A stretch of DNA of 64,000 bases from contig OZ004612.1 in NCBI GenBank assembly GCA_963924565.1, positions 6,262,001-6,326,000 on the forward strand. The letters run 5' to 3'. The translations under genes and the position numbers were made by a program. Each line of letters starts with the position of its first letter. Position 1 is the stretch's first letter. The notes beneath the pieces were generated by a model. It saw nothing but the letters and a program-made list of their open reading frames with translations. It did not search any database and was not told where the DNA came from. Shown here one piece after another: positions 380-57,900 of the stretch. Source of the DNA: Ascidiella aspersa. Its lineage: Eukaryota.

Positions 380-3300
380 TCACCGGTCGGCGGTGGTTTT
401 GATGGTGGAGCGCCTCCTGGCGTTCACAACCGCAGCTCTCGAGCTACCCCGCGCAACAGCGTCGATGTTCTTCAGCCTTGGAAGCGAGTGGTTCTTTAAA
501 ACACCACAGGCCTTGACGCAAAGCTGCTCGACGGTGGCCGAGTAGAGAAGTGGGTTAAGCACGCTGTTAATGGGAAGCAGGACGATTGCGCTGACCGCAT
601 AAGCAACGCCGGACATTTGCACGCCGCCGAGGTGGACGTAGCTCAACACACAGACCGGCACCCAGCAGCAGAAGTCGGTAAAGATGAGGCGCGCTATGCG
701 GCTCTGCAGCTTTGCGTTGCGGTCGTTCTCGCTCGACTGTACGCGCGCGCGCCCTTTGCGATAGATGTATAAGTAGGCGACCGCTATGTAGACGAACAGG
801 AGAAGGTTGAGGCTGAGAAGCGCCGTCGAAAAATGCCACGACTGGTCGGCATGCGCGCTACTGAACAGGCGCGGCATGCACACGCTGTTCTCGCCGTAGT
901 AGCCGAACTGGCCGCGAACCGCGAGACCGTGGTGCCGCAAGTACAGCAACACGCTCGACCACGAGTTTACATCCAGGCTAGCGTTGACTCGGCGACTCAA
1001 ACGCGCCGCCAACTCGCCCAACTCGGATTTGCTGAGCACTTCGGATCGTGTAAAGAGGTTCGGCATCCATACGCTAGACGTAAAGTAGCCGCCGCCAAAG
1101 TCAAGCAGTGGAACTGCTGCAAGCGCGAGAGATACCAGCCACACTGATACCAGTAGCAGGAGTGCTGTGCGCTGTCGGATGTTGGACACTCTCAGGGGTT
1201 TGCGCAGAGTGATCACGCGTAAAGTTGTGGTGACCGACATGAAAAGGATCGAAGCCTCGCTAGATAAGACAACGAGGAAGCCGAGTAAGGAACAAGTTAC
1301 GCTCAGTCGCCACTCGCGGTCGCTGCTCCAGTAGCTGCCGGAAAAACGCAGCGAAAAAGCGGCGACCGTGGCCAGGTAAACACCCAGCAGTAGGTCGGCT
1401 GCTGCCAGGTTGAGCACAAGCAGCAGGTTGAGACTGGTGAAGGGCGAGCTGTAGTTAGTGTTGCGCAGCTTCCTGCAAACGGTGAAGATCACAATGAGAT
1501 TGCCGGCTGTGGCCATGAAGGCCATGATCCAAAGAAGGGCGCGCAGGAACTCGTTGGAGATCATTTCGTACACGGAGGAGAAGACTCCGGCCTCGTCGCT
1601 CCCATCGGCGCAGTCTGCGCGTCCGTCTTTCACGGCGCTGCGGTCAACGGAAAGCGGCGTCCCGCCCCAGCAGTAAAACCTCCCGGGGCAAGCATCCTCC
1701 GCCTCGTCCGATCCTCTCTCGCAATCCACCTTACCATCACACAGCTGCTTGATGTCTATTGTAGGGGGTTTCCCAGGGTCACAGGGTACCCTCGTGGGGC
1801 AGTCCCGTTCGTCGAAGCCTTGCGGACATTGCGCCCCAATGTAGTGCCAAGCTGGGTCCGGCTCGCCGTCGCAGTAGCGCTCGCCCATGCGGAAGTGAAA
1901 GCGACAGGGGTCAGTGCAGAAGGCTGGTTGCTCCGGGCAGTTTGAACACTCGTCACTCATGTCGTCGCACTCTGGTCTTTTGTCGCACTCCGTTGCCTGA
2001 ACAGACCCGTACTTTGTACTACAGTTTACCAGTCGGCCTTCCCCAACTGCTTCCATGGCTTGACAGTGCCTCTCGTCCGCTCCGCCTTCACATTGAACCA
2101 CCCCGTTGCATATGACGTCAACCAATTTGGAGCAGTTGCTTACGTCATTGGCGCATGGCATCTCGTCCAGTTCGCACTCCGAGGTGAAATTAGCGAATAC
2201 GTCCTCGCAAATCGCCAGGCTTCGCGCGTCTTCGCAAAAGCACTCGTCCGAAAGGTCGACGCAGTCCACAACTCCGTCGCAAACCTGCGATCGACCGACA
2301 GTCGTGGAGTTGTCGAAACATCGAAAGCAGGAGTTTGCGCTACACAAGTCCGACTTGTCCTTGCACTGCGCCACTTTATCGAGCAAGTTGGCTTGGGGGA
2401 GAAGGCAAGCGACTGGTGAGTGTGCCCCGAAGCACTTGAAACCGGAAACTGTGGGTTGGAGTTCGTCACTTCCGTCCGGGCAGTGCTTCTTGCGGTCGCA
2501 AAATCCCCGCAGAGGAATAAAACTGCCGTCAAGGCATTGAAAGGGCGTCTTGCATGCCTCGTCATCACAGCCCGAAATGCAGACAGTTTTAGATGAGTTA
2601 GAACTCGTATGTGGTACAGTGACGCACGTTGCGTTCACACCAGTCAACTTGCGCTGCATCATAAACGCTTTGGTAGCGTTTTCACCTTTACATACTGACA
2701 CCCGTACGACGCAGCTCGAGCAGGGCACCAAGCTGGTGGCACACGGCTCGTCGCTTCCGTCTAAACAGTCTTTAACGCCATCGCTCAGTTTCTGAAGGTC
2801 GATACAGCGACCCTGACCCTCACACGTTCGGTTTTCATTCCCCGTACACCCGCAAAGGGCCTGGTGTTGTGAGCAGTCGCACGGGATTTCATCACTCCAA
2901 TCTCCGCAGTCGTTCAAGCCGTCGCACACCGGCTGGGCATCAATCCAGGCTCGGTGGCAGCCTGTATCAGCTGGGCTTCCGACACACTTACACGCAAAGG
3001 TGCCAACTGGCAGGCTGCAGTTGGACTCGTCGCTCCAGTCGCTGCAGTCGTTAATGCTGTCGCAGAACTTGGGCTCCAGTACACAGCCGATTTTCGCTGT
3101 TTCCGGGCAAGAGCTAGGGTCCTGGTCGTAGCAGGCGCAAGGAAGCCACCCTGCAGTACATTTGCAGCCAATCTCGTCCTCCCAGCGCCCACAGTCGTTC
3201 TCGCCGTCGCACAACCAGTACTTGCTGATGCACCTCTCCGATCCTGGGCACTGGATCCTGTCCGGAACATTACAACAGGGAGGTTCGTCAGTGGCAAGCG

Positions 3301-6135
3301 GGCAGTCGTTGAGCCCGTCGCACATTTTAAAGGAGTCGATACAGGTTAAAGTGCAGTTTGGGTTGTGTGAGGGGCAGGGGCAACGACGCTGTTCGAAGGG
3401 GCAAGCGCACTCCATTTCGTCGCTGGCGTCGGCACAGTCGTTGTCGTAGTCGCACTCCCAGGCACCGGGAATGCATTTGGGCCCATTGCCGCAGTCCTGG
3501 CCCATTCTCCCGCACGCACATTCGAACTGATCATCACCACATGTGCAGTTCTGCTCGTCGCTCCAATCGTAGCAGTCGTTACGGCCGTTGCACCTCAAGG
3601 CTGGGTCAAGGCAGCCTCTGCAGTTGTCCCAAGCGCTTCCAGGTTGGCCGTAGCAGTCGCAGGTAAATTTATCGCCCGGGCAGGTGCAGTTGAACTCGTC
3701 CAGCCCGCCCGGACAGTCCAAATAGCCGTCGCATGTTTCGTTGGCGAATATACAGTGAACGCCCTTCGCGCAGACTGTGCCCGCCTGCCAGGGACAGTCG
3801 ATTTTATCGGACGCGCAAACGCAGTCTCTTTCGTCGCTGCCGTCGCCGCACTGGTCGAAAGAGTCGCAGCGTTCCGACTGTGGGAGGCATCCATTATAGT
3901 TTGGACACGTCTTGGTCGCGTTGGCGAAGCAATCGCACTGGAACTGGTTAGGCGAGCAAGAACACCCGGCCTCGTCCTCCCAGGCATTGCAGTTGTTCTG
4001 GCCGTCGCAGAAAAACGATTTTTTGGTGCAACTGCGGTCCGCAGTCTGTCCTGTGATCGCGCATTGTATGGAGCTTTCAGGACAAGGACAGTCGGCTTCG
4101 TCGGTTCCGTTTACGCAATCCGGCACGCCGTCGCAAAAAGTGGAAAGCGGTATAAGCTTAGAGTCGACGCAACCCTCTGTATTGTTACAGGGGCAAGGTA
4201 GCCACTGTTCTTTACAGTAAAGCTCATCGGTTCCCAGCATACAGTTCTCGACTCCATCGCACGCTGCACCCCTGGGGTAGCACCCTGCCCCCCCGTAGCA
4301 TTTTGGGGCTGGAAACTTGCACCCACACTGGAGCCGGTCCCCGTCGCAGCTGCAGTAGAGCTCGTCGCTTTGGTCGTCGCAGTCCGGGACCCCATCGCAC
4401 ACCCACCCTGGGGGTATTGTGGCCCCCAATTGGATGACGGAAGCGTTGTTTCTGGGGTTTGGGTGAAGTAGGGGTCCGTCATCCATCGGGCACCCACATC
4501 GATACGGTTTTGTGCAATGTTCTGAAGGGATAACAAGGCTAGTTTTATATGTTTGTGAAAATGTATGTTGCATAAATTCACGGATAATTTTCTATTTATG
4601 CGGAATTAAAACTTGTATATTAGATAGTAATTATTATTAATCAATATACTGTTGCTGCCAGGCATTGTTTCAATTGTTCTTTCGGCAAAATTTTATTAAA
4701 ATGTCTCTCTAGATATTATTAGCGAAACAAGGCATAACTGTATTTAAAAATGGAATTTACTAAACTAATATATAGGTAACATATTTATAAATAAACCAAG
4801 TTATAAGAACCATTTCATTTATTAAGATAATTATTGTATTGTTGCATAATAATTAACCCTAAAATAAAACATTTTGAGAAGCTTCTCGGTCATGCACCAA
4901 ACAACGCCAAATACTACTTAAAAATCATTCATCAAAGTTCTTTATCGATTTAACTATATAATAAGACATCAAACCTGCGCAATCGTAGCAGCGAATTCTC
5001 TTTTCCTGAAGAGAGTCCGCGAAATCGTTGACTGACGAACACCAGTAGAAGTCTACCCCCGCTGTAGTGCAGCTGTGGTAAACCTCACCTTTATACGTGA
5101 AGGGAAACACGCAGGTCAAGGGTGACGTCGTGCACACGTGACTTGCTGCGCCTGTGACAAGGCAAGCGAAACAGTCGGTTTATAGCCAGAACTATCCAGC
5201 CTTGCCAGGGGTTTTCGTTGAAATTGCAATTTTACGATTAGTGATACGGCCTTTACAGTTATTTTCATCCTTATGACCTACGGCACCCCTAAAAGATATT
5301 AAATAGATTTTCGGCACCCCGACTGGAATTTTCGTTGAGTATTTTACTGAAATATTACTATAAATGAAACTGGAGCATCACAATCAACTTAAAACAGATA
5401 GGAAAATGTCATTTAAGATAATGGTCTCTAATCGTACACAAATAGTTGTATCAAGAAGCTTACCAACAAAGCAAAAGTCAGATTCTTAAAAATTCTCAAA
5501 TACCTATCGGCACCCTTGGACATTATAAATGGTACATCAGGGCGCCGCGGCACTCCGGTTAGAAACCACTGCTTTAGTAGGTCGTTTTTACCAGGGCTGT
5601 GGAGTCGGGGTTTGGACTCGACGGAGTCGGTTTGTTTGTCTGGAATCGGACTCGGGACTAGAGTAAGACTACATAAAACTACCCGTGTCAGAAGTCATCC
5701 ATACGTTTCGCAACACATTAAAGTTTTTGTTTCGAAAATCGGAATATATACTTTGTCGGAAATCTTGAAGGTACAGATTTATCGAATGCTATGGTTAGAT
5801 CTTTTTATTAAATCAGTGACGTTTATGACTACGTTTTGTTCAACGCGTTTTTGGACCGCGATAGATATCTAAAACAACATGTTAACACATGGAATCCATC
5901 TACAAAACAAATTCTTTGCAACAATTAGTTTAAGGTAAATATTACCCAAACTACACTAAAACAACCAAAATATATTGTGAAAACGTATGGCTTTAGATGA
6001 TTTAATAGGCCAGTGACTAACTTAAGAAAACGCAAAAGTTAAATTACAAACAGGCTTACCTGTAACCAAAAAAGCCCACGCCAGAAGGCACAGTTCGGAA
6101 TTTGACGCCATTCGGGATTTGCCGCCATTCATCAT
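380..6135 (-). CDS. LDLa-repeat LGR/RXFP-type GPCR (GRL101-like but without LRRs) with N-terminal fibronectin type II domain; 3 coding exons
   Basis: Exon 6135-6060 (MMNGGKSRMASNSELCLLAWAFLVT, G|GTAAG). Exon 5151-4975 (GAAS then FN2-like CVFPFTYKGEVYHSCTTAGVDFYWCS; phase 1-1). Exon 4521-380 (CAG acceptor; joins the 1397-aa ORF at EHCTKPY). About 20 CDGxxDCxxxSDE LDLa motifs; hinge GVFSSVYEMISNEFLR; 7TM with LAAAD, FTDFCCWVP and NPLLY as in LGR/RXFP receptors. The ORF-track start at 4573 is intronic. Confidence 0.88.
5592..5800 (+). mobile_element. Partial MITE of the CAGGGCTGCGGAGTCGG family
   Basis: Starts CAGGGCTGTGGAGTCGG with GACTCGG-rich interior matching the copies at 41248 and 59706; right end not seen. 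Confidence 0.65.
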
Positions 6136-12795: not shown

Positions 12796-15620
12796 TTAGC
12801 ATGTGCTGGCATATCCAAGGTGATCCATTTCACGGGCCAGCTGGCACATACCACACGGCTTCATAAAGCTGTTCATCACACAGCAGTCGCCACAGATGCT
12901 CCCCTGTTTAATAAAAATAAATTGAAAAGGACAGTTACACAGATATCTTATGAGGAACCATATCAAATACTAAATTCTAAACTGTATTAAATAGTACACA
13001 GAAAGCCAACGCAGACTCGCCGAAGTTGTCGATCAATGATGCAAGCAAGGCAGGCTATAACAAAACAACTTGTCTGCAGTGAGGTTCGTACTCACGACCT
13101 CCGGTTATACCGGGTCCGTTACTCTACCGAATGAGCTAAACAGGCTCGAATGTAAGTTCAACGCTTGTATCATTAGTGCGCCTTATAGGTATGTCAAACG
13201 CTTTTAGCATTGTAAGTTCAAACGGTTATTTTTCCAAGTCCAGTCTTTTGCAAAAAATAACAATTCAAGTTCCTTTCTAAGCCATCAATTGCCCAAGTCT
13301 GCGTCAAAGTCTGAGTGAAGTCACATTAAGAGCTATTTAACTTTATGTTCATTCATTAACATTCGAAATTAAACGTTAAACTATTAAAATCGGTAAACTC
13401 TCCCGTTTATGAGCAATAACTCAACTAAAAATAATAAAAACGTAATAGACAGAAAGCAAATTAATTTACGTGCACAATTTTAGATAAACCTAATTGTTAA
13501 AAAAAAAATAATTGATTGAAAACATTAATTTTAGCCCGAGTTTTTTGACAAAATGATTCAAGTCCAAGTCAATTTATTTGTCCGAAAGACTTAAGTCAAG
13601 TCAAATCATTTGAAAGCATTGACTGAAGTGCACTTAAGGTCAGGTCATTGACGTAAATCATTACAACCCTGAAAACAAAGGCTTCGCTGCGAAATGCCAT
13701 AAATTTCCAGCAATCGTACCGGTATGTTGTGTGTTCCGCGAAACCTTGACCTCATAGCCATGTGACCCCCAGGAACGCAGCCAGCGCCTTCACCGGAACA
13801 ACCAACACAGCAGTTTTCGTTCATTCTTACCGCCAAGGCACCAAAGTAGTTGTGGCAGCAGCAGAGGACGCAGCAACCTGTTCACACGACAGTTTAATGT
13901 TGCTTCTATATTATGTTCCGGAATAATCAGAAATGTTGTAAACAAGTCATTTTGAAATAACGTAATTCTCAGTCAAGACATTTGTGAAATAATTTAAGTC
14001 TTAGTCAAGTCCAAAATAGCAAGTCAATTCCCAGTCCAAGACAAATCTCAGTGAAATCATTAGAGCAAGTCATATTTAACTTAAACCACCATTGTAATAA
14101 TAACACAACTTACCGTGAAATTTGGTAAATTTAATAAATAATGAGCAATAATCAATTCAACTAAAAAAATAACGAAAAAACAACATGTAGCATTCTAATC
14201 GTTTTACGTGCAAAACTTGAGATAAATAGCTTTTATATTAAAATGAATTTTATATTAAAATGTTGAATGAAAACACTTGATTTTAACCCAATCAATGACT
14301 TATTTTTTTTTCATTACCAAATACGACTTGAGTCAAATCAAGTATTTTAAATACATGCTACTTAATATTTCAAATCAAGTCTAAAAGAGTTTTTTTCAAA
14401 TGTTTTCACTGGATCTTACAACACTGTATTGTTCCGTTTTATAAGTTTGAAGTGTATGAGGTTGGTTATTCCAGTTTAATTGTCTTGACGTTTTTCGTCT
14501 CGATGGCGTTTGACCAAATCAAAATTCCCTCAAAGATTTCGTTCCTGTGTTTTCACCTTTTAGTCCTACTACAAGTGGACGCGTTGATCCTAAATGAATG
14601 TCCTACTACTAAACAAACGCGTCTTTAGTGACGAAGAACCTATACAACGCGAAAGTCATAAAACGTTTTGCAACGGCCTTGGTGAAATAGTTTAAAGAGA
14701 TGGAATGCGTTTTTACTGTCTCGCTTTTATTTCTGGTTTAATAGTTCTGTAGACTGTAGGTAACAAAAAAGTTCAACAGCATTGCAATAAAAACCAAGCC
14801 CGAAACGTAAAGTTTTAAATACCGTAGTCAAACATGCCAAGTTTTACAACCGTTAGTTTCATTAAGCCAATTTGACAAAGTAAAAAACACTTGACTTGAC
14901 TTAAGTGGTTTCACAAATCACTTGATTGGGACATAGGTATTTTAAAAATGACTTGCTTAAAAACACTGTTAAATGAAATTGGTCTGCTCTTCAAAGTGAT
15001 TTGCCATTTGTTGTCACTTACAACTTTTGATGTCTTTGTAACACTCGCAGAGACCGCTGCTCCAGTCCACAACGGCAGCCTGCTGCTGTACAACCGTGGT
15101 TGTTTGGATGACAGGCTGTGCTGTTATCACTGCAGGGTTGGGCGAAATGTTGCTGAAATCTGGCGGCTGACCTTTATTCATGTAGGGTCCCTGTAGCATA
15201 AGAGTTGCGGATTCTCGGCAGGTAAAATACACGGGTCTATTAACAAGTGTAACCAAACGGGGATAACAATGGTTAATTTGGTACGAGCATGTTATTTTGA
15301 ACCAAAATTGGCGCGAAACAAACATTGTTGCGCATCTATATTTTGAATTTATATAGGCCGAGGTAATATATTGGGATTATAGTTACATAAACAAAGTAGG
15401 TCACAAATTAGGATCATCATATGATAGGCCCTACCTAAATTAATTATAAGTATTTTGTGTTCAGTATAGTCTTAAGACCTTAAGTTATGTTGATTATGAT
15501 AGCCAATTTTGATTTCGTTTAGATATAGAATCGGAGCTAATATATGGTAACTTGTACACGATATTTAAAAAAACGATAAATGGGTATATAGGCCAAATAA
15601 CTTACTCTATCCATCTCCAT
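12796..15620 (-). CDS. PLAC8/cornifelin-family Cys-rich protein, paralog 1 (4 coding exons)
   Basis: Exons 15620-15606 (MEMDR), 15190-15022 (GPYM...VITAQPV...DWSSGLCECYKDIKS), 13877-13720 (CCCVLCCCHNYFGALAVRMNENCCVG...AMRSRFRGTHNIP), 12903-12796 (GSICGDCC...PCGMCQLAREMDHLGYASTC*); all GT-AG, phases 0/1/0. Confidence 0.9.
13020..13148 (-). mobile_element. tRNA-derived SINE head
   Basis: Minus strand TAGCTCATTCGGTAGAG (A box)...GAGTACGAACCTC (degenerate B box); related to 59240-59455. Confidence 0.6.
13210..13671. mobile_element. AAGTC-repeat hAT-like MITE (decayed)
   Basis: AAGTC arrays; ends TTACAACCCTG; same family as 60119-60627. Confidence 0.65.
13932..14426. mobile_element. AAGTC-repeat hAT-like MITE
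   Basis: TGTTGTAAACAAGTC...TTACAACACTG, homologous to 60119-60627. Confidence 0.7.
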
Positions 15621-17494: not shown

Positions 17495-18123
17495 ATTGAA
17501 ATGAAGGTGCCACACCTGGTAACCGGATCTCGGATCATTATTCCACTCACTTTGTAAATTTTGGGAGTGATAGTCTGCGCCACATTTTATACGATTATTT
17601 TTTAATAATAGCCATAAATGTACAATGGAACCAAAATTAGACGACAAACAGTCAAAAGTGTAACAGATTAAGCCTGTAGAAGGTTTGCATTGAATTAGAG
17701 GAAAAATGAAAATTAATCGAGACTGCTCATAGAATTGTTGTAGGCTACCGTACTTCTAATGTACGGTAACTAACAATTACATTTTAGTGCAAATGAACAC
17801 TAGACTACGTCGCTTTACAAAAATCAGGATCATATAGTTTAGCGGCAATGCACTTAATTGTATTGTAAATACGTTGCGGAGTGACTACAGGATTAATAAA
17901 CAAAAGTAATCTATTGTACAGAGCGACAAACAAAAAAGAATAATACTGAACGGAAGCCTTGTAGGCCTACATGAAGTTCCGATACTGCTTGCCGCCATCA
18001 GGGCCTAGACTAGGCCAAACAAAAAAATATACATTCAGCTACTAAGCATTTAAAAAGGCCGCGCGACCGGGCCACGAATCTAGGCCTCAGGGAAGGTCCT
18101 AAAAAGCGGCCCGGAAGTATATT

Positions 18124-21100
18124 TTAGCAGTTGTCGGCGTATCCCAGTCTGTTCATTTCCCTGGAGAGCTGGCACATGGCACATGGCTTGCAGCAATAGA
18201 TCATGCAGCAATCGCTGCAGATGTTGCCCTGCCGAGGAAAATAGTTTTGCCTGGTGAGACAAACAATATTTTAAGTGTCATTATATGAGAGCACATTCGA
18301 ATACGCTATTTTATTACTTTTGTGATTAAAAATTCCGGGCCAAGCTTGGCTGGAGCCCTCTTTTCAGGGTCAACTGTTAGTTAAATCGGGCTTATTTCCA
18401 TGGAAAAGACAGACCAACTCGAATTATTTCATTATATTGAGGCACCAATAATTCCGTGGTGCTCCCTTTTCCTTGGTGGCCTAAGTACGTGCTTTTTTGC
18501 TTATTAAATCCAGCCCTACTGCTGTAGTTTATGTGAAAACCAAAAATAAACGCAATTCCCCGTTAACGCATAACTTTTTACGTCTAATTTCTTGTTTTAA
18601 GCTGCCATTTTTTTTTCGCAGAGTGAAACGCCTGCCGAGATAGACCGATATATCGGTTTATTGATAACATCGACGATATTTGGCTTCTACCAATATATCG
18701 GTAAATGTAGGCCGATATTTTAGTAGCCTACTAAAATATAATAGAATTTCTCCTGTACAACAAACAACCCAATTTTGATCAAAAAATTAGGTTTTAGCTA
18801 CACAGTAAGTTAATATGCAAAATATTAGTTTATATAATTAATAAAGGTATATAAACTAAACATTACTGGAATTTTATTTTTAATAATTCAAGTTTTGAAC
18901 ATTTCCCAGGTATATAAAAAAATCGGCATCTGTTAACAAAATTATAAAAAAAATCGGGTATCGGTCCAAAAAAGTGATATCGGTCGATCTCTAACAATTA
19001 CCTAACTAAAACAATAAGCAATGGTATTGCTGAGTTCTTATCTATAATATAACTGTGTTATAGTTAATAACACATCAATATACAATTTCTGAAAAATTGC
19101 GTTAAGGTAAAAGGAGTATGTAGCCTTAAGTTTTTAAGTCATATTTATCAATGAATTTAAAAAGAACGGACGAACCAAATAAAATAATAACAAAATATGA
19201 CACCAAAAATCCCACAATCGCGCAAAATTGGGCTCCCAATTTGCGTGTGTGGTACAAATTGTTAAAAAGCAATAATTATTTACCACGTCATCAGGTTATG
19301 TTTGCTAAAACAGAGCAGTTCCATGGACGTCGAAATATCTTGTTTATGTTGTTTGTTTAGATTTGTACTTTTGGTTTCTAAGCGTACCTAAACTAGCTTG
19401 ATATCTCCATCTAGCGGCAACAAAAACACAGATGTTTAACGAGATAATATGATTTTTTGGCAGTGTGAGCGATGTCGACCAAATAAAAGACATAAATAAT
19501 CTAGAAATGTAATGCTCAGATGCACACAACTGTGTTTAACGACAACGCCAAAATTTCATGGTGTTAAGTATATGCTTTTAAACTTTTAAGAGATTGTTTT
19601 TTTTGTTCAGACTTTAAAATTTACAAAGCACCAAGCCAAGCACTTCAGAATTAAAAATCATGATAAAACAACCGATATGAAAAACATAATGTTTTAAGTT
19701 TTTAAAGTATATAGGTTTGAAACAATGAATAAAAGGTCACAACAGAAAACCAAAGTGTTTAACATAGCACATACTAAAAGTTTCTACAAAGTGCAGTGTT
19801 TAAGCTAATATCTTTCACAGTTAGCAAAAGTTTGCTTTGTTCTAAATATAATATATTATACACAATGACACAGCATGTAGAGAAACAGAAAATTTCTTAA
19901 AACATATAACACGAAATAGTTTACTTTCAAGTAGCACACTTTGGAAGTACATTAGAAAAAGGCAATATGGGCTGCACCTTAAATTGAGTGTTATCCGATT
20001 GTGCAAAAGTGTTAAAAATGTTGTGCCAGCTTTGTGTATTGCAAAATGCTAATTTTGTTACTTGAATCGGAGTTACGTACAAGTTATAGAGTTTGCTACA
20101 CAACAAAAGTTGCAAGCCGGAGTACAAAAGTTGAGGTTTTAAAAGGAAACACAATGGTGTTACCGCACTTTGAATTGTGGCATTCGATACGGAAGAATGC
20201 CTCATCACTTGCACTGAAGCATATTTCACAGGCATATGTGAAACACTCAAAAAACTGCATTCATCACCATCACTCTCTTCAAACGAATTGCTTCTATTAT
20301 TCACAGATGTTGGTGGCTGGAGATATTCCATTTCCAAGCGAGTCTTCTTTGCATTTTTGTAGACAACATAGAAAGCTTGTATGGTAGAGGCAGCTGCATT
20401 TCTCTTACAAATTTCCTTTTTTCTTTTGATGCGAAGTTGAGCTTTCATCTGTCTGAGTCGCCAAGTTCTTTGAAAGCATGCAGCTGCTTCATTTCTCTGA
20501 GCTATAAGGATCGCTCTTTCTTGCCGACAAAACCACTTTGCCCTCAATGCACGCCACCAGGGAATGATTGTCTTAACACTGTCCAGCATAGCTTGAACCC
20601 TTTCCTTATGCAGGATTTCATACAACTCTGCGCTGAGGAAAACTGAAGAGCTTCCGAACTGGCAAGAGCTTGAAAAATCAATTGTCGCATAGGTGTTAGA
20701 TAGGTTTTTCATAATCAGTTCACACTTTTCAGTGGGGGACATGTGATGAAAATCCTTCGTTATGATACGATTTGTGCGCCGAGAGAGTAGAAATGAAAAG
20801 TTGTTAAAAAACTGTTGATAGCGCATTTTGTGTGGCAAAAAATGCCCACAAACCTGAATTGTTTCTATGATTCCGGAGGATTTTAACTGCTCTACAACAT
20901 GAAATGAGTCAAAGCGTTTTGGCAGCGATTCCTCATTCGGCTTGATACATCTGATGTAATGGCAATTCGTAGATGCCATTGTTTTTAACAGATTGTCTAA
21001 CGATAGCTTGAATTGTCTCAAAACGGTTTTGTTGTGTTTTCCTTTGTTTGCTTCGTGGTTTGTCTTGAGGCCTGGTTTCTGCTGCAGCAGACAATTTAAA

Positions 21101-24100
21101 AACTCGTTTTTGCTGTCAAGCAAAATCTCTACAATTTCAGCAGGCAGCTCATCCTTGTTTTTGGCGATTAAGCTGTCCGTTGTGTACTCTACCTTGTTTG
21201 CATAGTGGCTCACAACAAAACAAGGTGCTGCCTTATATTGCTTCGAAATAAATCTGTCTTTCTTAAAAGTCTGAAAGATTCTGTTCATAAGCTGAACAGC
21301 GTTTGTTGACCGGTTTAGTCTACACTCTTCATTTAACAACGAAAACAAGCTGTTTTGCGGTGATTCAAGTACCCGAAGGCATTCTATTTTATCAACAAGT
21401 TCAGACGTGTTCCAGATTATGTGCTCGTGACTTAGTTCCTCCTGCTGTTGCTTGAGAAAGTTTTCAACATAATAATGCTGAAGTTTTTCGTTTGCGTAGT
21501 TTATGCAGAGCTGCTCGAGGCCGTTTCGTTGAAAGCTCTCAAATCCGTAAATGTCAAGGAGGCCAATAAAACTTTGCACTTTATCATTGGCAGCGGAAAT
21601 TTCACTTACAATCTCAGAAACGATCCAGTGGAACAGCATCTCATAAATAGACTTCATCAAAGATTCCATACGGGCTGCACACTCCTGTTTGGTGCAGGAC
21701 TTCTTCACCACACTTCTTCTTTTTCCCTCTCGCTTTCGCCCAGCTTCTATGCGACGCACAGTAACAGATTGCACGAGGCTATTAACCGGAACAGCCAGGA
21801 TAAAAGCGGCAACCTTTAAATGCAGCTGGCAGTTTTGGCTTGGCATACAAGGATTAAAGTCGTCATCGCCTTTCAATTCAACATTACTCAGATGCAAAAG
21901 CGCAGAAAGAACCTTGAATATTTCGCACTGCTTCTGGGATGAAATTCCAATGGCCAGCATGGCTTTCTTTGTTACACTGAAGGCTGCCTCCGTTTCCATA
22001 AAGTTGTTGCCAGCAGACTGCTGAACATTGTGTTCACCTAGATTACACTGCATTGACTTTTGGAATGAAACATTGCTGTTGATATTTGAGTTGTCGCCTG
22101 CTTCAAAATGATTGATGTCCAGGCAGAATTTTGATTTTTCTTCTGGTGTGGTTCCATTAACAAGCTGATAAAAAATGTGAAAGTTTTTCTCTGCTGAATC
22201 ACGCTTTGCTACCCTTGTTTTTTCAAGCAGGTAAATTTGAAGAGTTGCACCAGCAATATGGCCAGACCTATCATACTGCAGCTGAATGTACTTCCCAAAC
22301 CGACTGCTGTTATGATTTCTCGCCGTCGCAGCATTGCCAAAGGCTTCTAGGACTGGGTTTGAACTTAAAATCCTTTTCTCGATTTGATGTTGCTTCGGAA
22401 AGTTAATGTCATATGTTGCATTACAAACAGGCTCATCTGAATGTGACATATCATTGTTATTTGTGTCTATTCCAATGTAGGTAAGGTAATGCATGAGGCA
22501 TGACACGGTCCACGTTTTACCAGCCCCGCTTTCACCGCTAATGACAATAGACTGATTAGAAAGACCAACACCAATTTCCATGTCCCTTCTGGCACGCTCA
22601 ACGACAGAAAAAACATGAGCAGGCATGGCTCCCAGTTCAGCCATCGTAGCTCGATGATAGGCAAGGATCATTTTGCGATTGAACATCTCTGTAAACTCCT
22701 GAAAGGGATTAATGGCAAGAATAGTTCCAGAACCAAGCTTGCGATAAAATACACCACATTCGTACATTGCACGTAACGAGTAGAGAACCGCCGGTGTGTT
22801 GAGCGATGTCATTTTCGATAGGTCGGAATGAAAATATTCACCCTGCATTTCTTCGTCAAAGCAATTCCAAGATGCAACTGAGTGAATATCCCTTCCGTGC
22901 AGTTTCATGGAGTTTCCGCCTAACGTAACAACTTCAAAATAATTGTCATTGTGTACTTCAGCTATTCTGACAGGACTCCAAACAGAGGTGTCATCTTTTG
23001 CCCAAACCCACATACCCTCATGGAAAGTTATACCGGATTGGGCAGCCATATTTAAAGCTGTGTTTTATAAAAATGTCAATCAGCACAGCAGGTTATTTAT
23101 GCAACTCTATTGGTAAAACTAACTTAGACAAACTAAAATCTGATGAATGATAATAGAAAATTAATGCCTGTCATTTTAATAATTACCAGTGATTAAAAAC
23201 TGGACTAAACAACTTTGAAACCTTTTAAAAACGCATAACAAATTAATAATATAATATATACCCAAAAATCATTTTGAAAAATTATGTTTACAATAAATCA
23301 CAATATTTAACACTTATATATATATATATATATATCTGAAACCCAATACCATGCAGCTAGCAAATGACCTGTCTTTTAAACTTTGCTTTAAAGGATATGT
23401 CAATCAAATAGTCACGACCCCAAAAGGATAACGTCAGAGTATAATTACTTCTCAAGCTAGTTAGTTTGGTCTACACCTCTAAACACTGAAAGTGTGCGAC
23501 AAATCGTTTGAAGTGCTATAACTTATGTATGTTTTAGCTAAAATGCAATTATGTAACATGAATTAAAAAAAATTAATGAGTTTTACGAATTTAAGTTTTA
23601 ACTTATTAAAACTAACGAAAATTACAAGCATGTAATTGTAAATTTAATAATTGTCTCTTTGCTCTACCTCAGCACGCAATTCGGCGCTGGTCTAGAATCC
23701 TACCACAACGAAACACCATTTGGATTAGGGTGCGGGTTAGCGTTTGGGTTAAGGTGGGTCAAGTATTATTATTAAACAAAGAATATAATAATACTTGACC
23801 CACCCACACCCGAACGCTAACCCGCACCCTAACTCAAATTTTGTGCGTTGATTTTAGAACTGTGGTAGGATTCTAGACCAGCGCCCGCAATTCTGCAAAT
23901 CACTCCTCAGCGCTCGATACTAATCCTAAAATTAATCCGGTGTTTTTTCTAGACTTTTTCAAAAATCTGCCCGAAGCATTTTTAAAGTTGACCTTTGCAA
24001 TTATTCGAGCGCGGCGAACCGAAGCGCAACACCTGTCCAATAACGTAACGTTTCTATTAAATTTCACGCAAACCAAAATTTTAATTAACTTGCTCTTGAT

Positions 24101-26579
24101 GCAAGCCAATTTGAGTCAGCTGAATCAGATAATTTGTGGATTCAAAATTCATGGACTGAAATGGCGCTTTTTCTGTCAAAACTATTATAAAATACTAAAC
24201 AGTTAAACATGCAAGCCTTAATAAATAGTTTCTTAACCTTTTTCTTCCTTACAACTTTTTCTTTACAACTTTTTAAAGCTAAAACCTTTACAACTATTTT
24301 CGCAGTTGATTTTAAGGGCTTTCGGTCAGCTTGTCACAGTGGCATTGTTACGGGAGTCGGTAAAAGCCCTTGTTCAAATATTGGACGTTATTTGTCACCT
24401 GTATGCCGTGAGTTGCCCGAAACCTCGACCTCATGGCAAGGTGACCGCCCGGTACACATCCGGCCGGCTCGCCAGAACAACCGACGCAGCAGTTTTCTCC
24501 CATTCTCGAAGCGATGCACGCGAAGTAGAAGTGGCAACAAAAGAATGCGAGGCAACCTTGATAAAAAAGTTTTATTTTGGTTATTTGACGAAGAACTTGG
24601 TTTTAGTCAGATTTGCCATACCATTCGCTCTGTTAACCCTATAAGCGTAAACCACCTAAACCCTATGGCTAAAGTCCCAATAAAGGTCTATTAACATGAT
24701 TTCTGGGAAAATTTCATATTATACATTTACAGAACTACAGAACAAAGGTACCGGTAGTAGGCGTTTTATTTTAACAATACAGTAAAAACAAGAGAAACTC
24801 GATAATTCTGAATCGAAGCCGATGTCCAGTACGAAGTGATGGTATTAGCGCTTGTTCGACACTATACTGGTACCGGTGCTGATCCGATACCGAAATAATT
24901 TGTGCATAACAGCCATGGCTTGCTATCCAACGTAGAGCTTTGCAAATTTTGAATAAATATTATATTTAAACTAGAAGATAAATAGGCCTCTATTTGCCAA
25001 AAGCTGATCGTTATTATTGCAGTTTTAAGTTTGGTACATTTTGCCTATTGGGCCATATAGTAATGACAACATTGGGTAGCGGAGCGGTTCCCTAAACTTT
25101 TTAACCGAAGTATATAGGCTGTCAGTATCGAGACCATTAATAGCTTTAATGCTCATGGAGTTAAAACACTTTGACGTACAGCTTTTCAAGTCGTCGAAGC
25201 AGTCGCAAGTTCCACTGCTCCAGGCTCTACCGTTCGGTCCGATCTGCTGGGTGACCACGGTCGTGTTGACTACAGGCTGGGTGGTTATAACAGTCGAACC
25301 GGCGGGCAGCTGGCCGCCGTACGAAGTGTAGGACTGGGGATGCTGGTAGGTCTGTGTCAAACAATTAGGGCAAGGTAGGACAACGCTTGAAGCATTGTTA
25401 TAAATCGCAATGCTGTAGCTAGACATTTTGAAATGACTAGTAAGTCCTAGTCAAGTCATTTGTAAAATAAGTCCAAGTCAAGTGTTTTTGAATAAATAAC
25501 AAGTCAAGTTCAAGTCAAAAGTCATTATTAGAGCAAGTCAATTACAAGTCAAGTCCTTGTCATGAAAAATTAGCTATTAAAATTAAGTAAACTAGTCCGA
25601 CTATAAGCAATACCTTAAAATACCAAAAACACAATACAGAGCAAGCAATGTACAAAAATTAGAATAAATAACCCAATTTTACCTAAAATATTTAAGAAAA
25701 GCATTTCATTTCAACCCAAGTCATTTAACCAAACGACTTAAGTCAAGACAAATTATTTGTAAACAGTGATTTAAGTGCACTTAAGTCAATGTCCAGTGAT
25801 TGACTTAAGTCATTATAACACTGATAAATCGTTATAAAAGTAGCAACGAGAACATATTAATTTACTTTGCTGATTTTGACTTGCTATAAGGTAAAGCAAA
25901 TTAAGTCACTGGAACAGTGTGCATTGTATTATTTATTAGTAAGCCTATATTCAATTAAGTGCAAAAAAGGTAGTTTGGGCCTATAGAAAAACGAAAACAG
26001 GAACATGCTGGTATCCATAGCTGAACATAACACATAATTCACGAAATAAGAAAATTGATTGCACCAAATAATATTTGAATATATTTAGAAGCATTTCGAG
26101 TCGAGTTAATGTACAAAACTTTGAAAACTGGGGACTTACGACATACACCACATTTTGGGGATTATTTTCGCACCAACACAAGTAAATTTGGAAAACGCGC
26201 CTTCGTGTTTGGACAGCTTGTATGTTGCCTATAGTCAGCCGTAAAGCGGCTTATCAAGCACAGGATCTGTAACGAGGACCATAGACTAGTTTTCGCCTAC
26301 AATTTGAAACCCGCCATAACAGATAAAGCGTTTTTGGATTTCAAGCAAACGCAAGCATTGCGTTAATGGGACAACAAAATAAATAAAAAATAAATGTGAA
26401 ATTTGCGTGATTTAAAATGTTTCTACCGAAATGTGTTGGACGTTTTCCTTCTTAAGAATTATTTTGTGCATATCCTTAAAACATCTACGCTGGAAAATAT
26501 CGGGATTAGGTGAGAAAGTAGGTGCTACAACAACAATGTTCGTCGACCAAACTTATGGACTTACCACGTTAACTGCCAT
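18124..26579 (-). CDS. PLAC8/cornifelin-family Cys-rich protein, paralog 2 (4 coding exons; last intron hosts MYO19)
   Basis: Exons 26579-26565 (MAVNV), 25351-25180 (TYQH...VITTQPV...AWSSGTCDCFDDLKS), 24556-24399 (CCLAFFCCHFYFACIASRMGENCCVG...AMRSRFRATHGIQ), 18228-18124 (GNICSDCC...PCAMCQLSREMNRLGYADNC*); same intron positions and phases as paralog 1. Confidence 0.88.
18637..18993. mobile_element. MITE
   Basis: Inverted termini GAGATAGACCGATA / TATCGGTCGATCTC with CCGATA/TATCGG subterminal repeats. Confidence 0.65.
19927..23049 (-). CDS. MYO19: Unconventional myosin-XIX, single coding exon (1040 aa)
   Basis: GESGAGKTWT P-loop, LEAFGNA..NSSRFGK, DIYGFE, LEQLCINYANEKLQ, LNEECRLNR (KTWT and EECRLNR match class XIX as I recall it), three IQ-like motifs, short tail; uninterrupted ORF. 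Confidence 0.92.
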   Translation of the reverse strand: MAAQSGITFHEGMWVWAKDDTSVWSPVRIAEVHNDNYFEVVTLGGNSMKLHGRDIHSVASWNCFDEEMQGEYFHSDLSKMTSLNTPAVLYSLRAMYECGVFYRKLGSGTILAINPFQEFTEMFNRKMILAYHRATMAELGAMPAHVFSVVERARRDMEIGVGLSNQSIVISGESGAGKTWTVSCLMHYLTYIGIDTNNNDMSHSDEPVCNATYDINFPKQHQIEKRILSSNPVLEAFGNAATARNHNSSRFGKYIQLQYDRSGHIAGATLQIYLLEKTRVAKRDSAEKNFHIFYQLVNGTTPEEKSKFCLDINHFEAGDNSNINSNVSFQKSMQCNLGEHNVQQSAGNNFMETEAAFSVTKKAMLAIGISSQKQCEIFKVLSALLHLSNVELKGDDDFNPCMPSQNCQLHLKVAAFILAVPVNSLVQSVTVRRIEAGRKREGKRRSVVKKSCTKQECAARMESLMKSIYEMLFHWIVSEIVSEISAANDKVQSFIGLLDIYGFESFQRNGLEQLCINYANEKLQHYYVENFLKQQQEELSHEHIIWNTSELVDKIECLRVLESPQNSLFSLLNEECRLNRSTNAVQLMNRIFQTFKKDRFISKQYKAAPCFVVSHYANKVEYTTDSLIAKNKDELPAEIVEILLDSKNEFLNCLLQQKPGLKTNHEANKGKHNKTVLRQFKLSLDNLLKTMASTNCHYIRCIKPNEESLPKRFDSFHVVEQLKSSGIIETIQVCGHFLPHKMRYQQFFNNFSFLLSRRTNRIITKDFHHMSPTEKCELIMKNLSNTYATIDFSSSCQFGSSSVFLSAELYEILHKERVQAMLDSVKTIIPWWRALRAKWFCRQERAILIAQRNEAAACFQRTWRLRQMKAQLRIKRKKEICKRNAAASTIQAFYVVYKNAKKTRLEMEYLQPPTSVNNRSNSFEESDGDECSFLSVSHMPVKYASVQVMRHSSVSNATIQSAVTPLCFLLKPQLLYSGLQLLLCSKLYNLYVTPIQVTKLAFCNTQSWHNIFNTFAQSDNTQFKVQPILPFSNVLPKCAT
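23683..23885. mobile_element. Foldback MITE with GG...CC ends and 8-bp TSD
   Basis: 25-bp perfect TIR GGCGCTGGTCTAGAATCCTACCACA; inner arms also inverted; exact TSD CGCAATTC at 23675-23682 and 23886-23893. Confidence 0.9.
25425..25823. mobile_element. AAGTC-repeat hAT-like MITE
   Basis: AAGTC arrays; right end TTATAACACTG; homologous to 60119-60627. Confidence 0.7.
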
Positions 26580-27245: not shown

Positions 27246-38696
<11,451 letters not shown>

Positions 38697-39134
38697 GTTC
38701 AGACGCTGGTTGATCACTAGACTCACGACTAAATGCTGAAAGAAATATAAATCGATTACAGTGGTTTGTCTATATTATATATATCAGGAAATGAAACCAT
38801 AAAACAACTTAAAAAGTCAGACGAATTAATTCATAAATTACATAGGTTATAAGACTTAGTAACAGAAGAATATTGCTAAAATTGTTATGAATACAATCAT
38901 AAGTTATAGCATTAAATTAAAAAGTTAACTAAAGCGGACAGACAATTTTGCTGCAAAACTACCCTTTTAAATGCCTACAACTCTTCACGTCGACTCGCGT
39001 TTCTATTTTGCCAGCATGCTGCAAGGCACATTAATGCTTTTTAACACAACAACCAGTAAAGCTTTTTGATGCACAACACTCAGTGAACCGTACCTCAGTG
39101 AAGCTGCTTTTCAAGTTGTAGTTGTTGCTGCTAC

Positions 39135-39325
39135 GAAGCTCAAATGCAACTGATGAATATCTCCAAGTCAACCGTTGCTTTTATACGAGCAAGTCGCTGC
39201 CAGGCTACAGCAACTGTTGACCCCGAGTGGTACCCGCTGTGACTGGGAAGGTGACGATTGGTCACCTCTATCGGGACACTGTGACTTCGGCTAGCATCCA
39301 AGGTCGGGTCAAAAGGCCACATGGC
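39135..39325 (-). promoter_or_regulatory. SERCA copy A core promoter (TATA, Inr, E-box, T-box/CRE-like site)
   Basis: TATAAAA 39185-39179; TCATCAGT Inr-like ~30 nt downstream; CAACTG 39211-39216; AGGTGACGA 39249-39257; block conserved upstream of copy B. Confidence 0.7.
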
Positions 39326-44022: not shown

Positions 44023-57171
<13,149 letters not shown>

Positions 57172-57710
57172 GTTCAGACGCTGGTTGATCACTAGACTCA
57201 CGACTAAGTGCTATAGAAAGTAACTTTACTGCGAGAATCCTACAAGGCGATTCGGCGAATGCTAAATCGAACCTGAGAAAAACAAATCTTGTATGTCGTG
57301 TTTTTTTACTGTCAGTCGCACACGTATCCAGCGATAAAGAACTAGTCGGAGGATTTTTTTATTGAATAAGAAATCGAAGCCGCGCTCTGGGAAACGAACC
57401 ATTTGTAATCGGCCAGCGCTTGTACAATGTTAAATTTGTGAATGTCGTATTGAAATACTTTACAACTTTAGGTATAACTGCTGAGAAAACAACGCAGCTA
57501 AAACTCTAAAGGCTCAGCGTTATCTGGCTTGCTGTCTGTTACCAATTTACGTTCAAAGCTGTATCAACTTTACGTTCTATAAATATATTTATAAAAGCAA
57601 CTCCCGTTACGTTGCGGCTCGTCGTTCAACGTAAATCGAAAACAGACTTGATGCCTAAAGACCGCAGTAGCCTCGTGATCCGCTGACAAAACAACTAGTT
57701 GTTTCTCTTG

Positions 57711-57900
57711 TGAAGCTCAAAAGCAACTGATGAATGTGTCTCGGTTGCCGCCTGCTTTTATACGGGCAAGTCGCTCCCAGGCTGCAGCAACTGTTGAACT
57801 GTTAAACGCCGCTGAAACTGCTGTGACCCGTAAGGTGACGAGTTTTGCGCAGTTAACCGGTCAGTTAGCACCCTGGCCCGGTTCAAAAGGCAACATGTGA
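57711..57900 (-). promoter_or_regulatory. SERCA copy B core promoter
   Basis: TATAAAA 57762-57756; TCATCAGT Inr-like; CAACTG 57788-57793; AGGTGACGA 57833-57841; colinear with the copy-A block. Confidence 0.7.

What the first reader, a model, noticed from the sequence alone, without database searches (positions are those of the whole stretch)
18229..24398. Intronless MYO19 nested on the same strand inside the last intron of a PLAC8 gene
Seen: PLAC8-2 exon 3 ends at 24399 and the only matching terminal exon I found before PLAC8-1 is 18228-18124. The 6.2-kb intron (0.8 kb in paralog 1) therefore contains the full 3.1-kb MYO19 ORF in the same orientation. Known: vertebrate MYO19 has many introns, and nested genes are mostly antisense to the host. 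Inference: a retrogene that may have replaced its parent; host splicing must bypass the MYO19 acceptor and polyA site, so the two products may compete.
Basis: partly seen in the sequence, partly recalled or inferred. Interest (0 to 1): 0.75.

Follow-up and report, generated by a model that had tools for sequence, protein, structure and literature searches.

The report
Intronless MYO19 nested inside PLAC8 intron
In a sea-squirt genome, the only copy of the mitochondrial motor gene MYO19 has no introns and sits, on the same strand, inside the last intron of a small PLAC8/cornifelin gene; this arrangement is real on the sequence but of a kind already known to be common in sea squirts.

Summary
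A 1040-codon uninterrupted MYO19 ORF (23049-19927, minus) lies between PLAC8-2 coding exon 2 (24556-24399) and the only PLAC8-type terminal exon upstream of PLAC8-1 (18228-18124). The three PLAC8-2 exon peptides, searched separately, tile tunicate PLAC8 proteins end to end (residues 6-41, 43-94, 95-125 of 130). The window is ascidian, not vertebrate; the best MYO19 hit is Phallusia mammillata at 56% identity.

MYO19 is single-copy in this 308.6-Mb genome, while other myosins match as short exons. One stranded RNA run shows minus-strand transcription from about 23250 to about 19300 with no internal splice joints. PLAC8-2 exon 2 has zero reads. So MYO19 is expressed while the host is silent, and the 24399>18228 junction stays unproven by RNA.

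No poly(A) remnant or target-site duplication was found. Retrogene replacement is the likeliest origin, but it is inferred.

[quoted passage not shown] This scan's own unchecked notes list many intronless nested genes elsewhere in this genome. Verdict: a real, ordinary new member of a known kind.

The parts
25180..25426 (-). PLAC8-2 coding exon 1 (82 codons + 1 base; donor GTACGT at 25179)
   Evidence: Read. The peptide aligns to residues 6-41 of Clavelina PLAC8 P0127. It also matched in the own-genome search.
24399..24556 (-). PLAC8-2 coding exon 2 (158 nt, ends phase 0, donor GT 24398-24397)
   Evidence: Read. It is 67-79% identical to four tunicate PLAC8/cornifelin proteins that carry PF04749. 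It aligns to P0127 residues 43-94. RNA depth is zero in run X4.
18229..24398 (-). PLAC8-2 intron 2 (6170 nt), which contains the whole MYO19 gene
   Evidence: GT...AG ends read. The same phase-0 intron site occurs in PLAC8-1 (816 nt). It also occurs in Clavelina, where the truncated model P0122 ends ...GIQVL.
19927..23049 (-). MYO19 open reading frame, 1040 aa plus stop, no intron
   Evidence: ORF found. PF00063 myosin head, E 5.9e-165, residues 75-805. It is 56% identical over 99% of its length to Phallusia mammillata unconventional myosin-XIX. It is the only full-length copy in the genome.
19300..23250 (-). Approximate extent of the MYO19 transcript (ends known only to a 200-nt bin)
   Evidence: depth 1.2-14 in every bin from 19251-19450 to 23051-23250, all with the first mate on +. 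Depth is 0-0.09 in the adjoining bins. No joints were listed inside.
18124..18228 (-). PLAC8-2 terminal coding exon (34 codons + TAA), acceptor AG 18230-18229
   Evidence: Read. It hits PF04749 profile positions 78-101 of 101, E 1.1e-4. It aligns to P0127 residues 95-125, directly after the end of exon 2. It is the only such exon besides that of PLAC8-1.
23683..23885 (.). Palindromic multi-copy repeat (MITE-like) in the intron upstream of MYO19
   Evidence: Inverted arms of 25 nt (100% complementary) and 60 nt (87%). Both-strand RNA read pile-up with many variant letters.
12796..15199 (-). PLAC8-1, the downstream paralogue (exons 15199-15022, 13877-13720, 12903-12796), used as the un-nested comparison
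   Evidence: Read. Only the exon 2 and exon 3 sequences align to the corresponding PLAC8-2 exons (72% and 70% nt identity). The other matches are short dispersed repeats lying upstream of and at the start of PLAC8-2.

Best explanation
This is an ascidian locus. A functional, single-copy, single-exon MYO19 gene (class XIX myosin, the actin motor of the mitochondrial outer membrane) lies on the same strand inside the 6.17-kb last intron of a three-coding-exon PLAC8/cornifelin-like gene, PLAC8-2.

Shown: MYO19 is transcribed as its own unspliced message of about 4 kb that starts and ends inside the intron. It is made in a sample where the host exon has no reads at all. It therefore most likely has its own promoter and 3'-end signal.

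Inferred: to make PLAC8-2 protein, RNA polymerase must read through the whole MYO19 unit, and the spliceosome must join 24399 to 18228. Because MYO19 has no introns it offers no competing splice sites. Only its 3'-end signal can cut host transcripts short.

Inferred, about even odds: MYO19 became intronless by retroposition of its mRNA followed by loss of the intron-bearing parent (retrogene replacement), a route reported as common in Ciona. The event is old enough that poly(A) and target-site traces are gone.
For: - ORF and domain.
- Best hits: by my count, 106 of the 120 listed hits are named myosin-XIX/MYO19, 9 are unnamed and 5 carry a generic or other name. Tunicate MYO19s rank first.
- Start Met and N-terminus are conserved in 9 of 9 aligned tunicate sequences.
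- Single copy: of 31 six-frame matches in the 308.6-Mb genome, 1 is full-length (this one). The other 30 are stretches of 34-85 residues at 29-62% identity in conserved motor motifs, meaning other myosins split into exons.
- Host gene: canonical GT/AG sites and compatible phases. Exon peptides, searched separately, tile P0127 at 6-41, 43-94 and 95-125.
- PLAC8-2 exon 2 is closer than PLAC8-1 exon 2 to all four outgroup proteins: 41, 35, 37 and 38 identical residues against 33, 31, 35 and 35. For exon 3, alignment scores favour PLAC8-2 against three of the four (138/117/140 v 111/104/123) and are level against the fourth (122 v 123); counts of identical residues are mixed.
- There is no other terminal exon.
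- The same intron position occurs in PLAC8-1 and in Clavelina.
- RNA: 818 reads laid from about 6% of run X4. Depth over MYO19 is on one strand only, depth is zero at 24051-24650 and 23251-23650, and no joints fall inside MYO19.
- Literature: PMC2760879, PMC5803294, PMC5408686 and PMC3814207 (passages read).
Against: - The 24399>18228 junction was not observed. PLAC8-2 exon 2 had zero reads, and the terminal exon lay outside the 6000 letters I was allowed to lay.
- Only one RNA run was available, its tissue is unknown, and about 6% of it was read.
- The exact 5' and 3' ends of MYO19 were not resolved. Table 6 was empty, and 63 loose-end rows were not shown. A non-coding 5' exon further upstream, or spliced-leader trans-splicing, cannot be excluded.
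- No canonical AATAAA or ATTAAA lies between the stop codon and 18884, although coverage ends near 19300.
- No poly(A) remnant or flanking direct repeat supports retroposition.
- Pfam finds no IQ motif in the neck.
Confidence: 0.7

Rival explanations
1. The nest did not arise by retroposition. MYO19 lost its introns in place, for example by recombination with its own cDNA or by stepwise loss. Alternatively it was moved as DNA, and the PLAC8 gene came to span it through local rearrangement or loss of intervening exons in the tandem PLAC8 array.
For: No poly(A) remnant or target-site duplication was found. In Clavelina both MYO19 (CAK8692984/5, XP_076816378) and the closest PLAC8 (CAK8692178, XP_076817467) sit on one contig in both assemblies (11.5 Mb and 20.8 Mb). 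This hints that the two genes were already on one chromosome before the nest formed. PLAC8 genes here form a tandem array of at least three copies on this contig.
Against: Losing every intron of a roughly 3.1-kb coding sequence one at a time is less parsimonious than a single cDNA-mediated event. No relic PLAC8 exons lie between MYO19 and the flanking PLAC8-2 exons. Sharing a chromosome is weak evidence: it rests on contig lengths and accession numbers only, and those numbers are about 800-1,100 apart.
Confidence: 0.25
2. PLAC8-2 is a dead or dying gene. The arrival of MYO19 split it, exons 1-2 and the 18228 exon are no longer joined, and the 'nest' is a relic.
For: RNA depth over exon 2 is zero in the one RNA run. 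The intron is 7.6 times longer than in PLAC8-1 (6170 v 816 nt). Paralogues exist that could cover the function.
Against: All three exons keep open frames, canonical splice sites and compatible phases. Exon 2 is closer to all four outgroup PLAC8 proteins than the PLAC8-1 exon 2, and exon 3 scores higher against three of the four. The cysteine pattern of exon 3 matches the outgroups where PLAC8-1 has lost two cysteines. Silence in one sample of unknown tissue is weak evidence.
Confidence: 0.12
3. MYO19 has no promoter of its own. It is cut out of the PLAC8-2 primary transcript, for example by spliced-leader trans-splicing at an acceptor upstream of its ATG, in an operon-like way.
For: Ascidians use spliced-leader trans-splicing and operons, and single-exon genes are enriched in Ciona operons (PMC2760879). 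Coverage starts abruptly within 200 nt of the ATG, and AG acceptor-like sites lie there.
Against: No reads at all fall on PLAC8-2 exon 2 or on the unique intron sequence at 23251-23650 and 24051-24398, while MYO19 has depth 4-14. A shared primary transcript should also yield some PLAC8-2 mRNA.
Confidence: 0.07
4. An assembly artefact placed MYO19 between PLAC8-2 exons.
For: No DNA reads were laid across the joins. Reads were laid on RNA.
Against: The window has no N and lies in a 75-contig, chromosome-scale assembly. Three runs of one study hold 75-94% of the sampled words of 18000-25500. The exon order and phases give a clean gene.
Confidence: 0.03

Closest known systems
Retrogene replacement ('orphan retrogenes'), e.g. 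amphioxus and Ciona SYCP1; reported as common in Ciona (Kim et al. 2014, seen only as cited in PMC5803294 and PMC5408686)
   Same: The gene has a single coding exon of about 3.1 kb, and its family is multi-exonic in vertebrates (recalled, not tested here). It is the only copy in the genome, it is expressed, and it sits in an unrelated gene's territory.
   Different: No retroposition hallmark was found. The ancestral locus and the date are unknown because relatives' genomes could not be read. I could not see whether MYO19 is on Kim et al.'s list, since neither the paper nor its supplements are held.
Same-strand host/nested gene pairs, as catalogued in Drosophila (PMC3814207) and mammals (PMC11694760, search listing only)
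   Same: The nested gene lies wholly inside one intron, on the same strand, and is single-exon. That is the typical form of same-strand nested genes: 72.5% are single-exon in Drosophila. Expression is not coupled to the host in the one sample.
   Different: The nested gene here is a long, conserved housekeeping-type motor gene. Drosophila nested genes tend to be short, young and testis-biased. The host is a tiny gene of about 170 codons whose locus is mostly the guest.
Class XIX myosins (MYO19) of deuterostomes
   Same: It has a motor domain, is about 1000 aa long with a short tail, and its best hits across tunicates, echinoderms, amphioxus and vertebrates are MYO19.
   Different: The tail is conserved only among tunicates. 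Pfam detects no IQ motif. Mitochondrial targeting is untested.
PLAC8 / cornifelin family (PF04749)
   Same: The host has the cysteine-rich domain, and exon 3 matches profile positions 78-101. Exons 2 and 3 are 67-79% and about 60-74% identical to tunicate cornifelin/PLAC8 proteins.
   Different: The last intron is 6.17 kb. In the other four three-exon PLAC8 loci of this genome it is about 0.6, 0.8, 0.8 and 4.3 kb.

Membership tests
Class XIX myosin (MYO19) | Myosin motor domain | tested here: met
   PF00063 E 5.9e-165, residues 75-805, profile positions 2-678 of 679. The P-loop GESGAGKT and switch motifs are invariant in the 9-sequence tunicate alignment.
Class XIX myosin (MYO19) | Closest relatives over the whole length are MYO19 orthologues | tested here: met
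   Phallusia MYO19 at 56% identity and 99% coverage. By my count 106 of 120 listed hits are named myosin-XIX/MYO19, 9 are unnamed and 5 carry a generic or other name (one is labelled MYO5B). No class tree was built.
Class XIX myosin (MYO19) | Neck with IQ motifs | tested here: inconclusive
   Pfam PF00612 was not reported for the whole protein or for residues 800-1040 at E up to 10. IQ-like stretches are visible by eye. Many orthologues also lack a precomputed PF00612 hit.
Class XIX myosin (MYO19) | Short tail that binds the mitochondrial outer membrane (MyMOMA region; name recalled) | not testable with these tools
   No profile exists for it. The tail aligns only among tunicates, with a conserved C-terminal ILPF motif.
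PLAC8 / cornifelin (PF04749) | Complete cysteine-rich PLAC8 domain | tested here: inconclusive
   Only exon 3 reaches Pfam (E 1.1e-4, 23.5 bits, below the 34.4-bit cut-off for a whole protein). Exon 2 is 67-79% identical to four proteins carrying PF04749. The three exon peptides tile P0127 without gap. The joined protein was not scanned.
Host/nested gene pair | Nested gene lies wholly within one intron of the host transcript | tested here: inconclusive
   Met on sequence: splice sites, phases, exon tiling and the absence of any other terminal exon. The host junction was not seen in RNA, because the host is silent in run X4 and the two exon ends are 6172 nt apart, beyond the 6000-letter limit.
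Host/nested gene pair | Nested gene is an independent transcription unit | tested here: met
   Strand-specific depth of 1.2-14 over 19251-23250, with zero depth on host exon 2 and on unique intron sequence upstream. Exact ends were not mapped.
Retrogene that replaced its parent | No introns where the ancestral gene had them | tested here: inconclusive
   The coding sequence is intronless and no splice joints occur in the RNA. Other myosins of this genome match exon by exon. I know the intron-rich state of MYO19 in vertebrates only from recall. Relatives' gene structures could not be fetched.
Retrogene that replaced its parent | Parental copy absent from the genome | tested here: met
   1 full-length match out of 31. 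The other 30 are short motor-motif exons at 29-62% identity, and no match falls outside the conserved motor motifs (query residues about 170-310, 480-580 and 667-760).
Retrogene that replaced its parent | Poly(A) remnant and target-site duplication at the flanks | tested here: not met
   One search lists no flanking direct repeat beyond chance-level AT-rich 16-22-mers. Only short A-rich runs lie in the 3' region. This is expected if the event is old.
Retrogene that replaced its parent | Sits at a locus different from the ancestral one | tested here: inconclusive
   In Clavelina, MYO19 and the closest PLAC8 share a contig, but their accession numbers are about 800 (CAK) and about 1,090 (XP) apart. 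They are probably not nested there. In Styela they are on different contigs. This is a proxy only.

The most novel reading that the evidence does not exclude
The same-strand nest acts as a switch. Where MYO19 is transcribed from its intronic promoter, or where its 3'-end signal is recognised, PLAC8-2 transcripts are blocked or cut short. Full PLAC8-2 mRNA would then be made only where that signal is suppressed in the context of the host intron. Expression of a ubiquitous mitochondrial motor and a PLAC8 protein would be mutually exclusive by architecture. The single RNA sample (MYO19 on, host exon at zero) is compatible with this but does not test it.
Probability: 0.1. Interest if true: 0.45.

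Novelty: new member of a known kind. Interest (0 to 1): 0.25.

Why it matters
It gives a clean, checkable annotation of a locus that gene predictors may truncate. A Clavelina PLAC8 model that stops at the same exon-2 boundary (P0122) shows such truncation does occur.

It also adds MYO19 to the candidate retrogene replacements in tunicates. That bears on how fast tunicate genomes reshuffle gene structure while keeping gene content.

As a test case for interference between same-strand host and guest genes it is usable but not special. Neither the gene family, the origin mechanism nor the architecture is new.

Tried and rejected
As a proxy I used contig lengths and accession numbers. This is weak evidence.
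- Metagenome scan with a tunicate MYO19 alignment: 115 of 565 candidate stretches encoded a relative, and 80 were kept. The best were only 38% identical and none was clearly tunicate. Nothing came of it and the loci were not analysed further.
- Intron homology between the two PLAC8 paralogues, to find an 'empty site': only exons 2 and 3 and short dispersed repeats align, so no breakpoints could be defined.
- Search for flanking repeats or a composite element around MYO19: none found.
- Pfam on single exons: 1 of 6 exon peptides hit PLAC8. Pfam on the MYO19 tail: nothing meaningful.
- Rfam and ARAGORN on the window: nothing in the intron.
- Paper searches: 'Myo19' + 'Ciona' gave 1 irrelevant paper. 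The key paper, Kim et al. 2014, is not held. I saw it only as cited, and its gene lists and supplements could bear on whether MYO19 is already listed.
- In one search my exon-2 query was one base out of frame through my own slip. The correct frame was used.
- I did not use the big representative search, structure prediction or the Atlas. The proteins were not left open by the cheaper searches.
Full report
**What is there.** On the minus strand the window carries, in order:
- PLAC8-2 coding exon 1 (25426-25180).
- PLAC8-2 coding exon 2 (24556-24399).
- A 1040-codon uninterrupted ORF (23049-19927).
- A 34-codon PLAC8-type terminal exon (18228-18124).
- A second PLAC8 gene, PLAC8-1 (15199-15022, 13877-13720, 12903-12796).

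These were read. Splice sites are canonical: GTACGT and GTGACA donors, and AG acceptors after pyrimidine-rich runs. Phases match: phase 1 after exon 1 and phase 0 after exon 2 in both paralogues, and exon 2 is 158 nt in both. The intron between 24399 and 18228 is 6170 nt. The matching intron of PLAC8-1 is 816 nt.

**The big ORF is MYO19, and the genome is an ascidian.**
- Pfam gives a myosin head at E 5.9e-165 over residues 75-805.
- In the word search, tunicate proteins come first: Phallusia mammillata unconventional myosin-XIX at 56% identity and 99% coverage, then Clavelina at 47% and Ciona at 42%.
- MYO19 of echinoderms, amphioxus and vertebrates follow at 34-40%.
- By my count 106 of the 120 listed hits are named myosin-XIX/MYO19, 9 have no name and 5 have a generic or other name.
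- An alignment with eight tunicate relatives keeps the start Met and the motor motifs invariant.
- Pfam reports no IQ motif. The mitochondrial tail function cannot be tested here.

**Single copy, no parent.** A six-frame search of the whole 308.6-Mb, 75-contig genome gave 31 matches. One is this ORF at 100% over 1-1040. The other 30 are stretches of 34-85 residues at 29-62% identity in the conserved motor motifs, which means other myosins split into exons. There is no intron-bearing MYO19 and no detectable relic of one.

**The 18228 exon belongs to PLAC8-2.**
- A tblastn of the terminal-exon peptide on the window finds only itself and the PLAC8-1 terminal exon. The next hit has E 0.12 and lies elsewhere.
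- The exon hits the last 24 positions (78-101 of 101) of Pfam PLAC8.
- Exon 2 finds four tunicate PLAC8/cornifelin proteins at 67-79% identity. All full-length ones continue after '...HGIQ' with a sequence like the 18228 exon.
- Aligned separately, the three exon peptides cover residues 6-41, 43-94 and 95-125 of the 130-aa Clavelina protein P0127. They tile it without gap or overlap.
- A truncated Clavelina model of the same gene ends '...GIQVL', so it runs into an intron at the same phase-0 site.
- PLAC8-2 exon 2 is closer than PLAC8-1 exon 2 to all four outgroup proteins. Exon 3 scores higher against three of the four and level against the fourth. This fits one gene under steady constraint.

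**PLAC8 family context.** The genome has five three-exon loci of this type. Their last introns are about 0.6, 0.8, 0.8, 4.3 and 6.2 kb.

**RNA.** One RNA-seq run of the same species label was on offer (X4). The operators cap the stretch at 6000 letters and the two exon ends are 6172 nt apart. I therefore laid 18651-24650, which holds exon 2, the upstream intron, MYO19 and about 1.3 kb beyond its stop. About 6% of the run was read and 818 reads were laid.
- Every 200-nt bin from 19251-19450 to 23051-23250 has depth 1.2-14, all with the first mate on +. In the usual stranded library this means RNA of the minus strand.
- The adjoining bins have 0-0.09.
- No joints fall inside MYO19.
- Unique intron sequence at 23251-23650 and 24051-24398, and exon 2 itself, have zero depth.
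- Both-strand pile-ups at 23651-24050 and 18851-19050 are multi-copy repeats. The first is a palindromic MITE-like element.

MYO19 is therefore expressed as an unspliced unit of about 4 kb inside the intron while the host is silent. The host junction remains untested. The exact ends were not resolved. No canonical poly(A) signal lies between the stop and 18884.

**Origin.** No flanking direct repeats or poly(A) remnant were found (and my reading). The paralogues' introns share no alignable sequence that would mark an insertion site.

As a proxy:
- In Clavelina, MYO19 and the closest PLAC8 lie on the same contig in two assemblies. Their accession numbers are about 800 and about 1,090 apart, so they are probably not nested there.
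- In Styela they are on different contigs.
- A Ciona model that lacks the P-loop exactly where another model has it hints at an intron there in Ciona. This is only a hint.

Retro-replacement is the most economical reading, but it is inferred. The alternatives, in-place cDNA-mediated intron loss or DNA-level relocation, stay open.

**Comparison with what is known.**
- In Ciona, single-exon genes make up 15% of non-operon genes and 38% of operon genes (PMC2760879, passages read).
- Retrogene replacement is described for amphioxus and Ciona SYCP1 and called relatively common in Ciona (PMC5803294, passages; PMC5408686, passages). Both cite Kim et al. 2014, which I could not read.
- In Drosophila 71% of nested genes are antisense to the host, and 72.5% of same-strand nested genes are single-exon. 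This is explained by selection against mis-splicing (PMC3814207, passages).
- This locus fits that pattern exactly.
- This scan's own unchecked notes list 108 entries on intronless, nested or retrogene-like genes elsewhere in this genome, including a same-strand case. I treat these as a lead only.

**Verdict.** This is a real but ordinary feature for an ascidian: a new member of known kinds (orphan retrogene candidate, same-strand nested pair). Interest is low to moderate.

Noticed in passing
window 27880-39220 and 44657-57797 (minus strand): There are two tandem SERCA-type P-type ATPase genes. Twenty exon-sized blocks match at 80-99% nt identity (most at 90-99%), while the introns do not align at all. 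This suggests strong constraint or exon-limited gene conversion.
   Followed up: partly
window 380-4573 (minus strand): A 1397-aa single ORF has 8 LDL-receptor class A repeats plus a rhodopsin-type 7TM. Its G+C is 54-57%, against about 35% around it.
   Followed up: no
window 13071-13145 (minus strand), inside PLAC8-1 intron 2: Rfam gives a tRNA hit at 32.1 bits (gathering score 29), but ARAGORN calls no tRNA. It is probably a tRNA-derived repeat or a decayed tRNA gene.
   Followed up: partly
window 23683-23885 and about 18851-19050: A palindromic element of about 200 nt has perfect 25-nt terminal inverted arms. It and a second repeat draw RNA reads from both strands at depths up to 62, with many variant letters, so they are expressed multi-copy MITE-like repeats. 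They flank MYO19 but the repeat search did not pair them with each other.
   Followed up: partly
G000:C6:6241750-6244075 (about 18 kb before the window's start): A third PLAC8 copy scores the same as PLAC8-1 and lies 33 kb from it. This suggests a recent segmental duplication that would also span the LDLa-7TM gene.
   Followed up: no
window 25409-25830, 14957-13932, 13675-13233: A dispersed 'GACTTGACTT'-rich repeat occurs upstream of PLAC8-2 and in both PLAC8-1 introns. One copy overlaps the PLAC8-2 start codon.
   Followed up: no
proteins P0134 v P0003 (Ciona MYO19 models): The newer Ciona intestinalis model replaces the P-loop GESGAGK with 21 unrelated residues. This is likely a mis-spliced model and hints at an intron at that spot in Ciona.
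   Followed up: no
window 34001-36000 and 52001-54000: There is strong purine skew (GC skew 0.34-0.50, AT skew 0.28-0.31) at matching places in the two ATPase gene copies.
   Followed up: no
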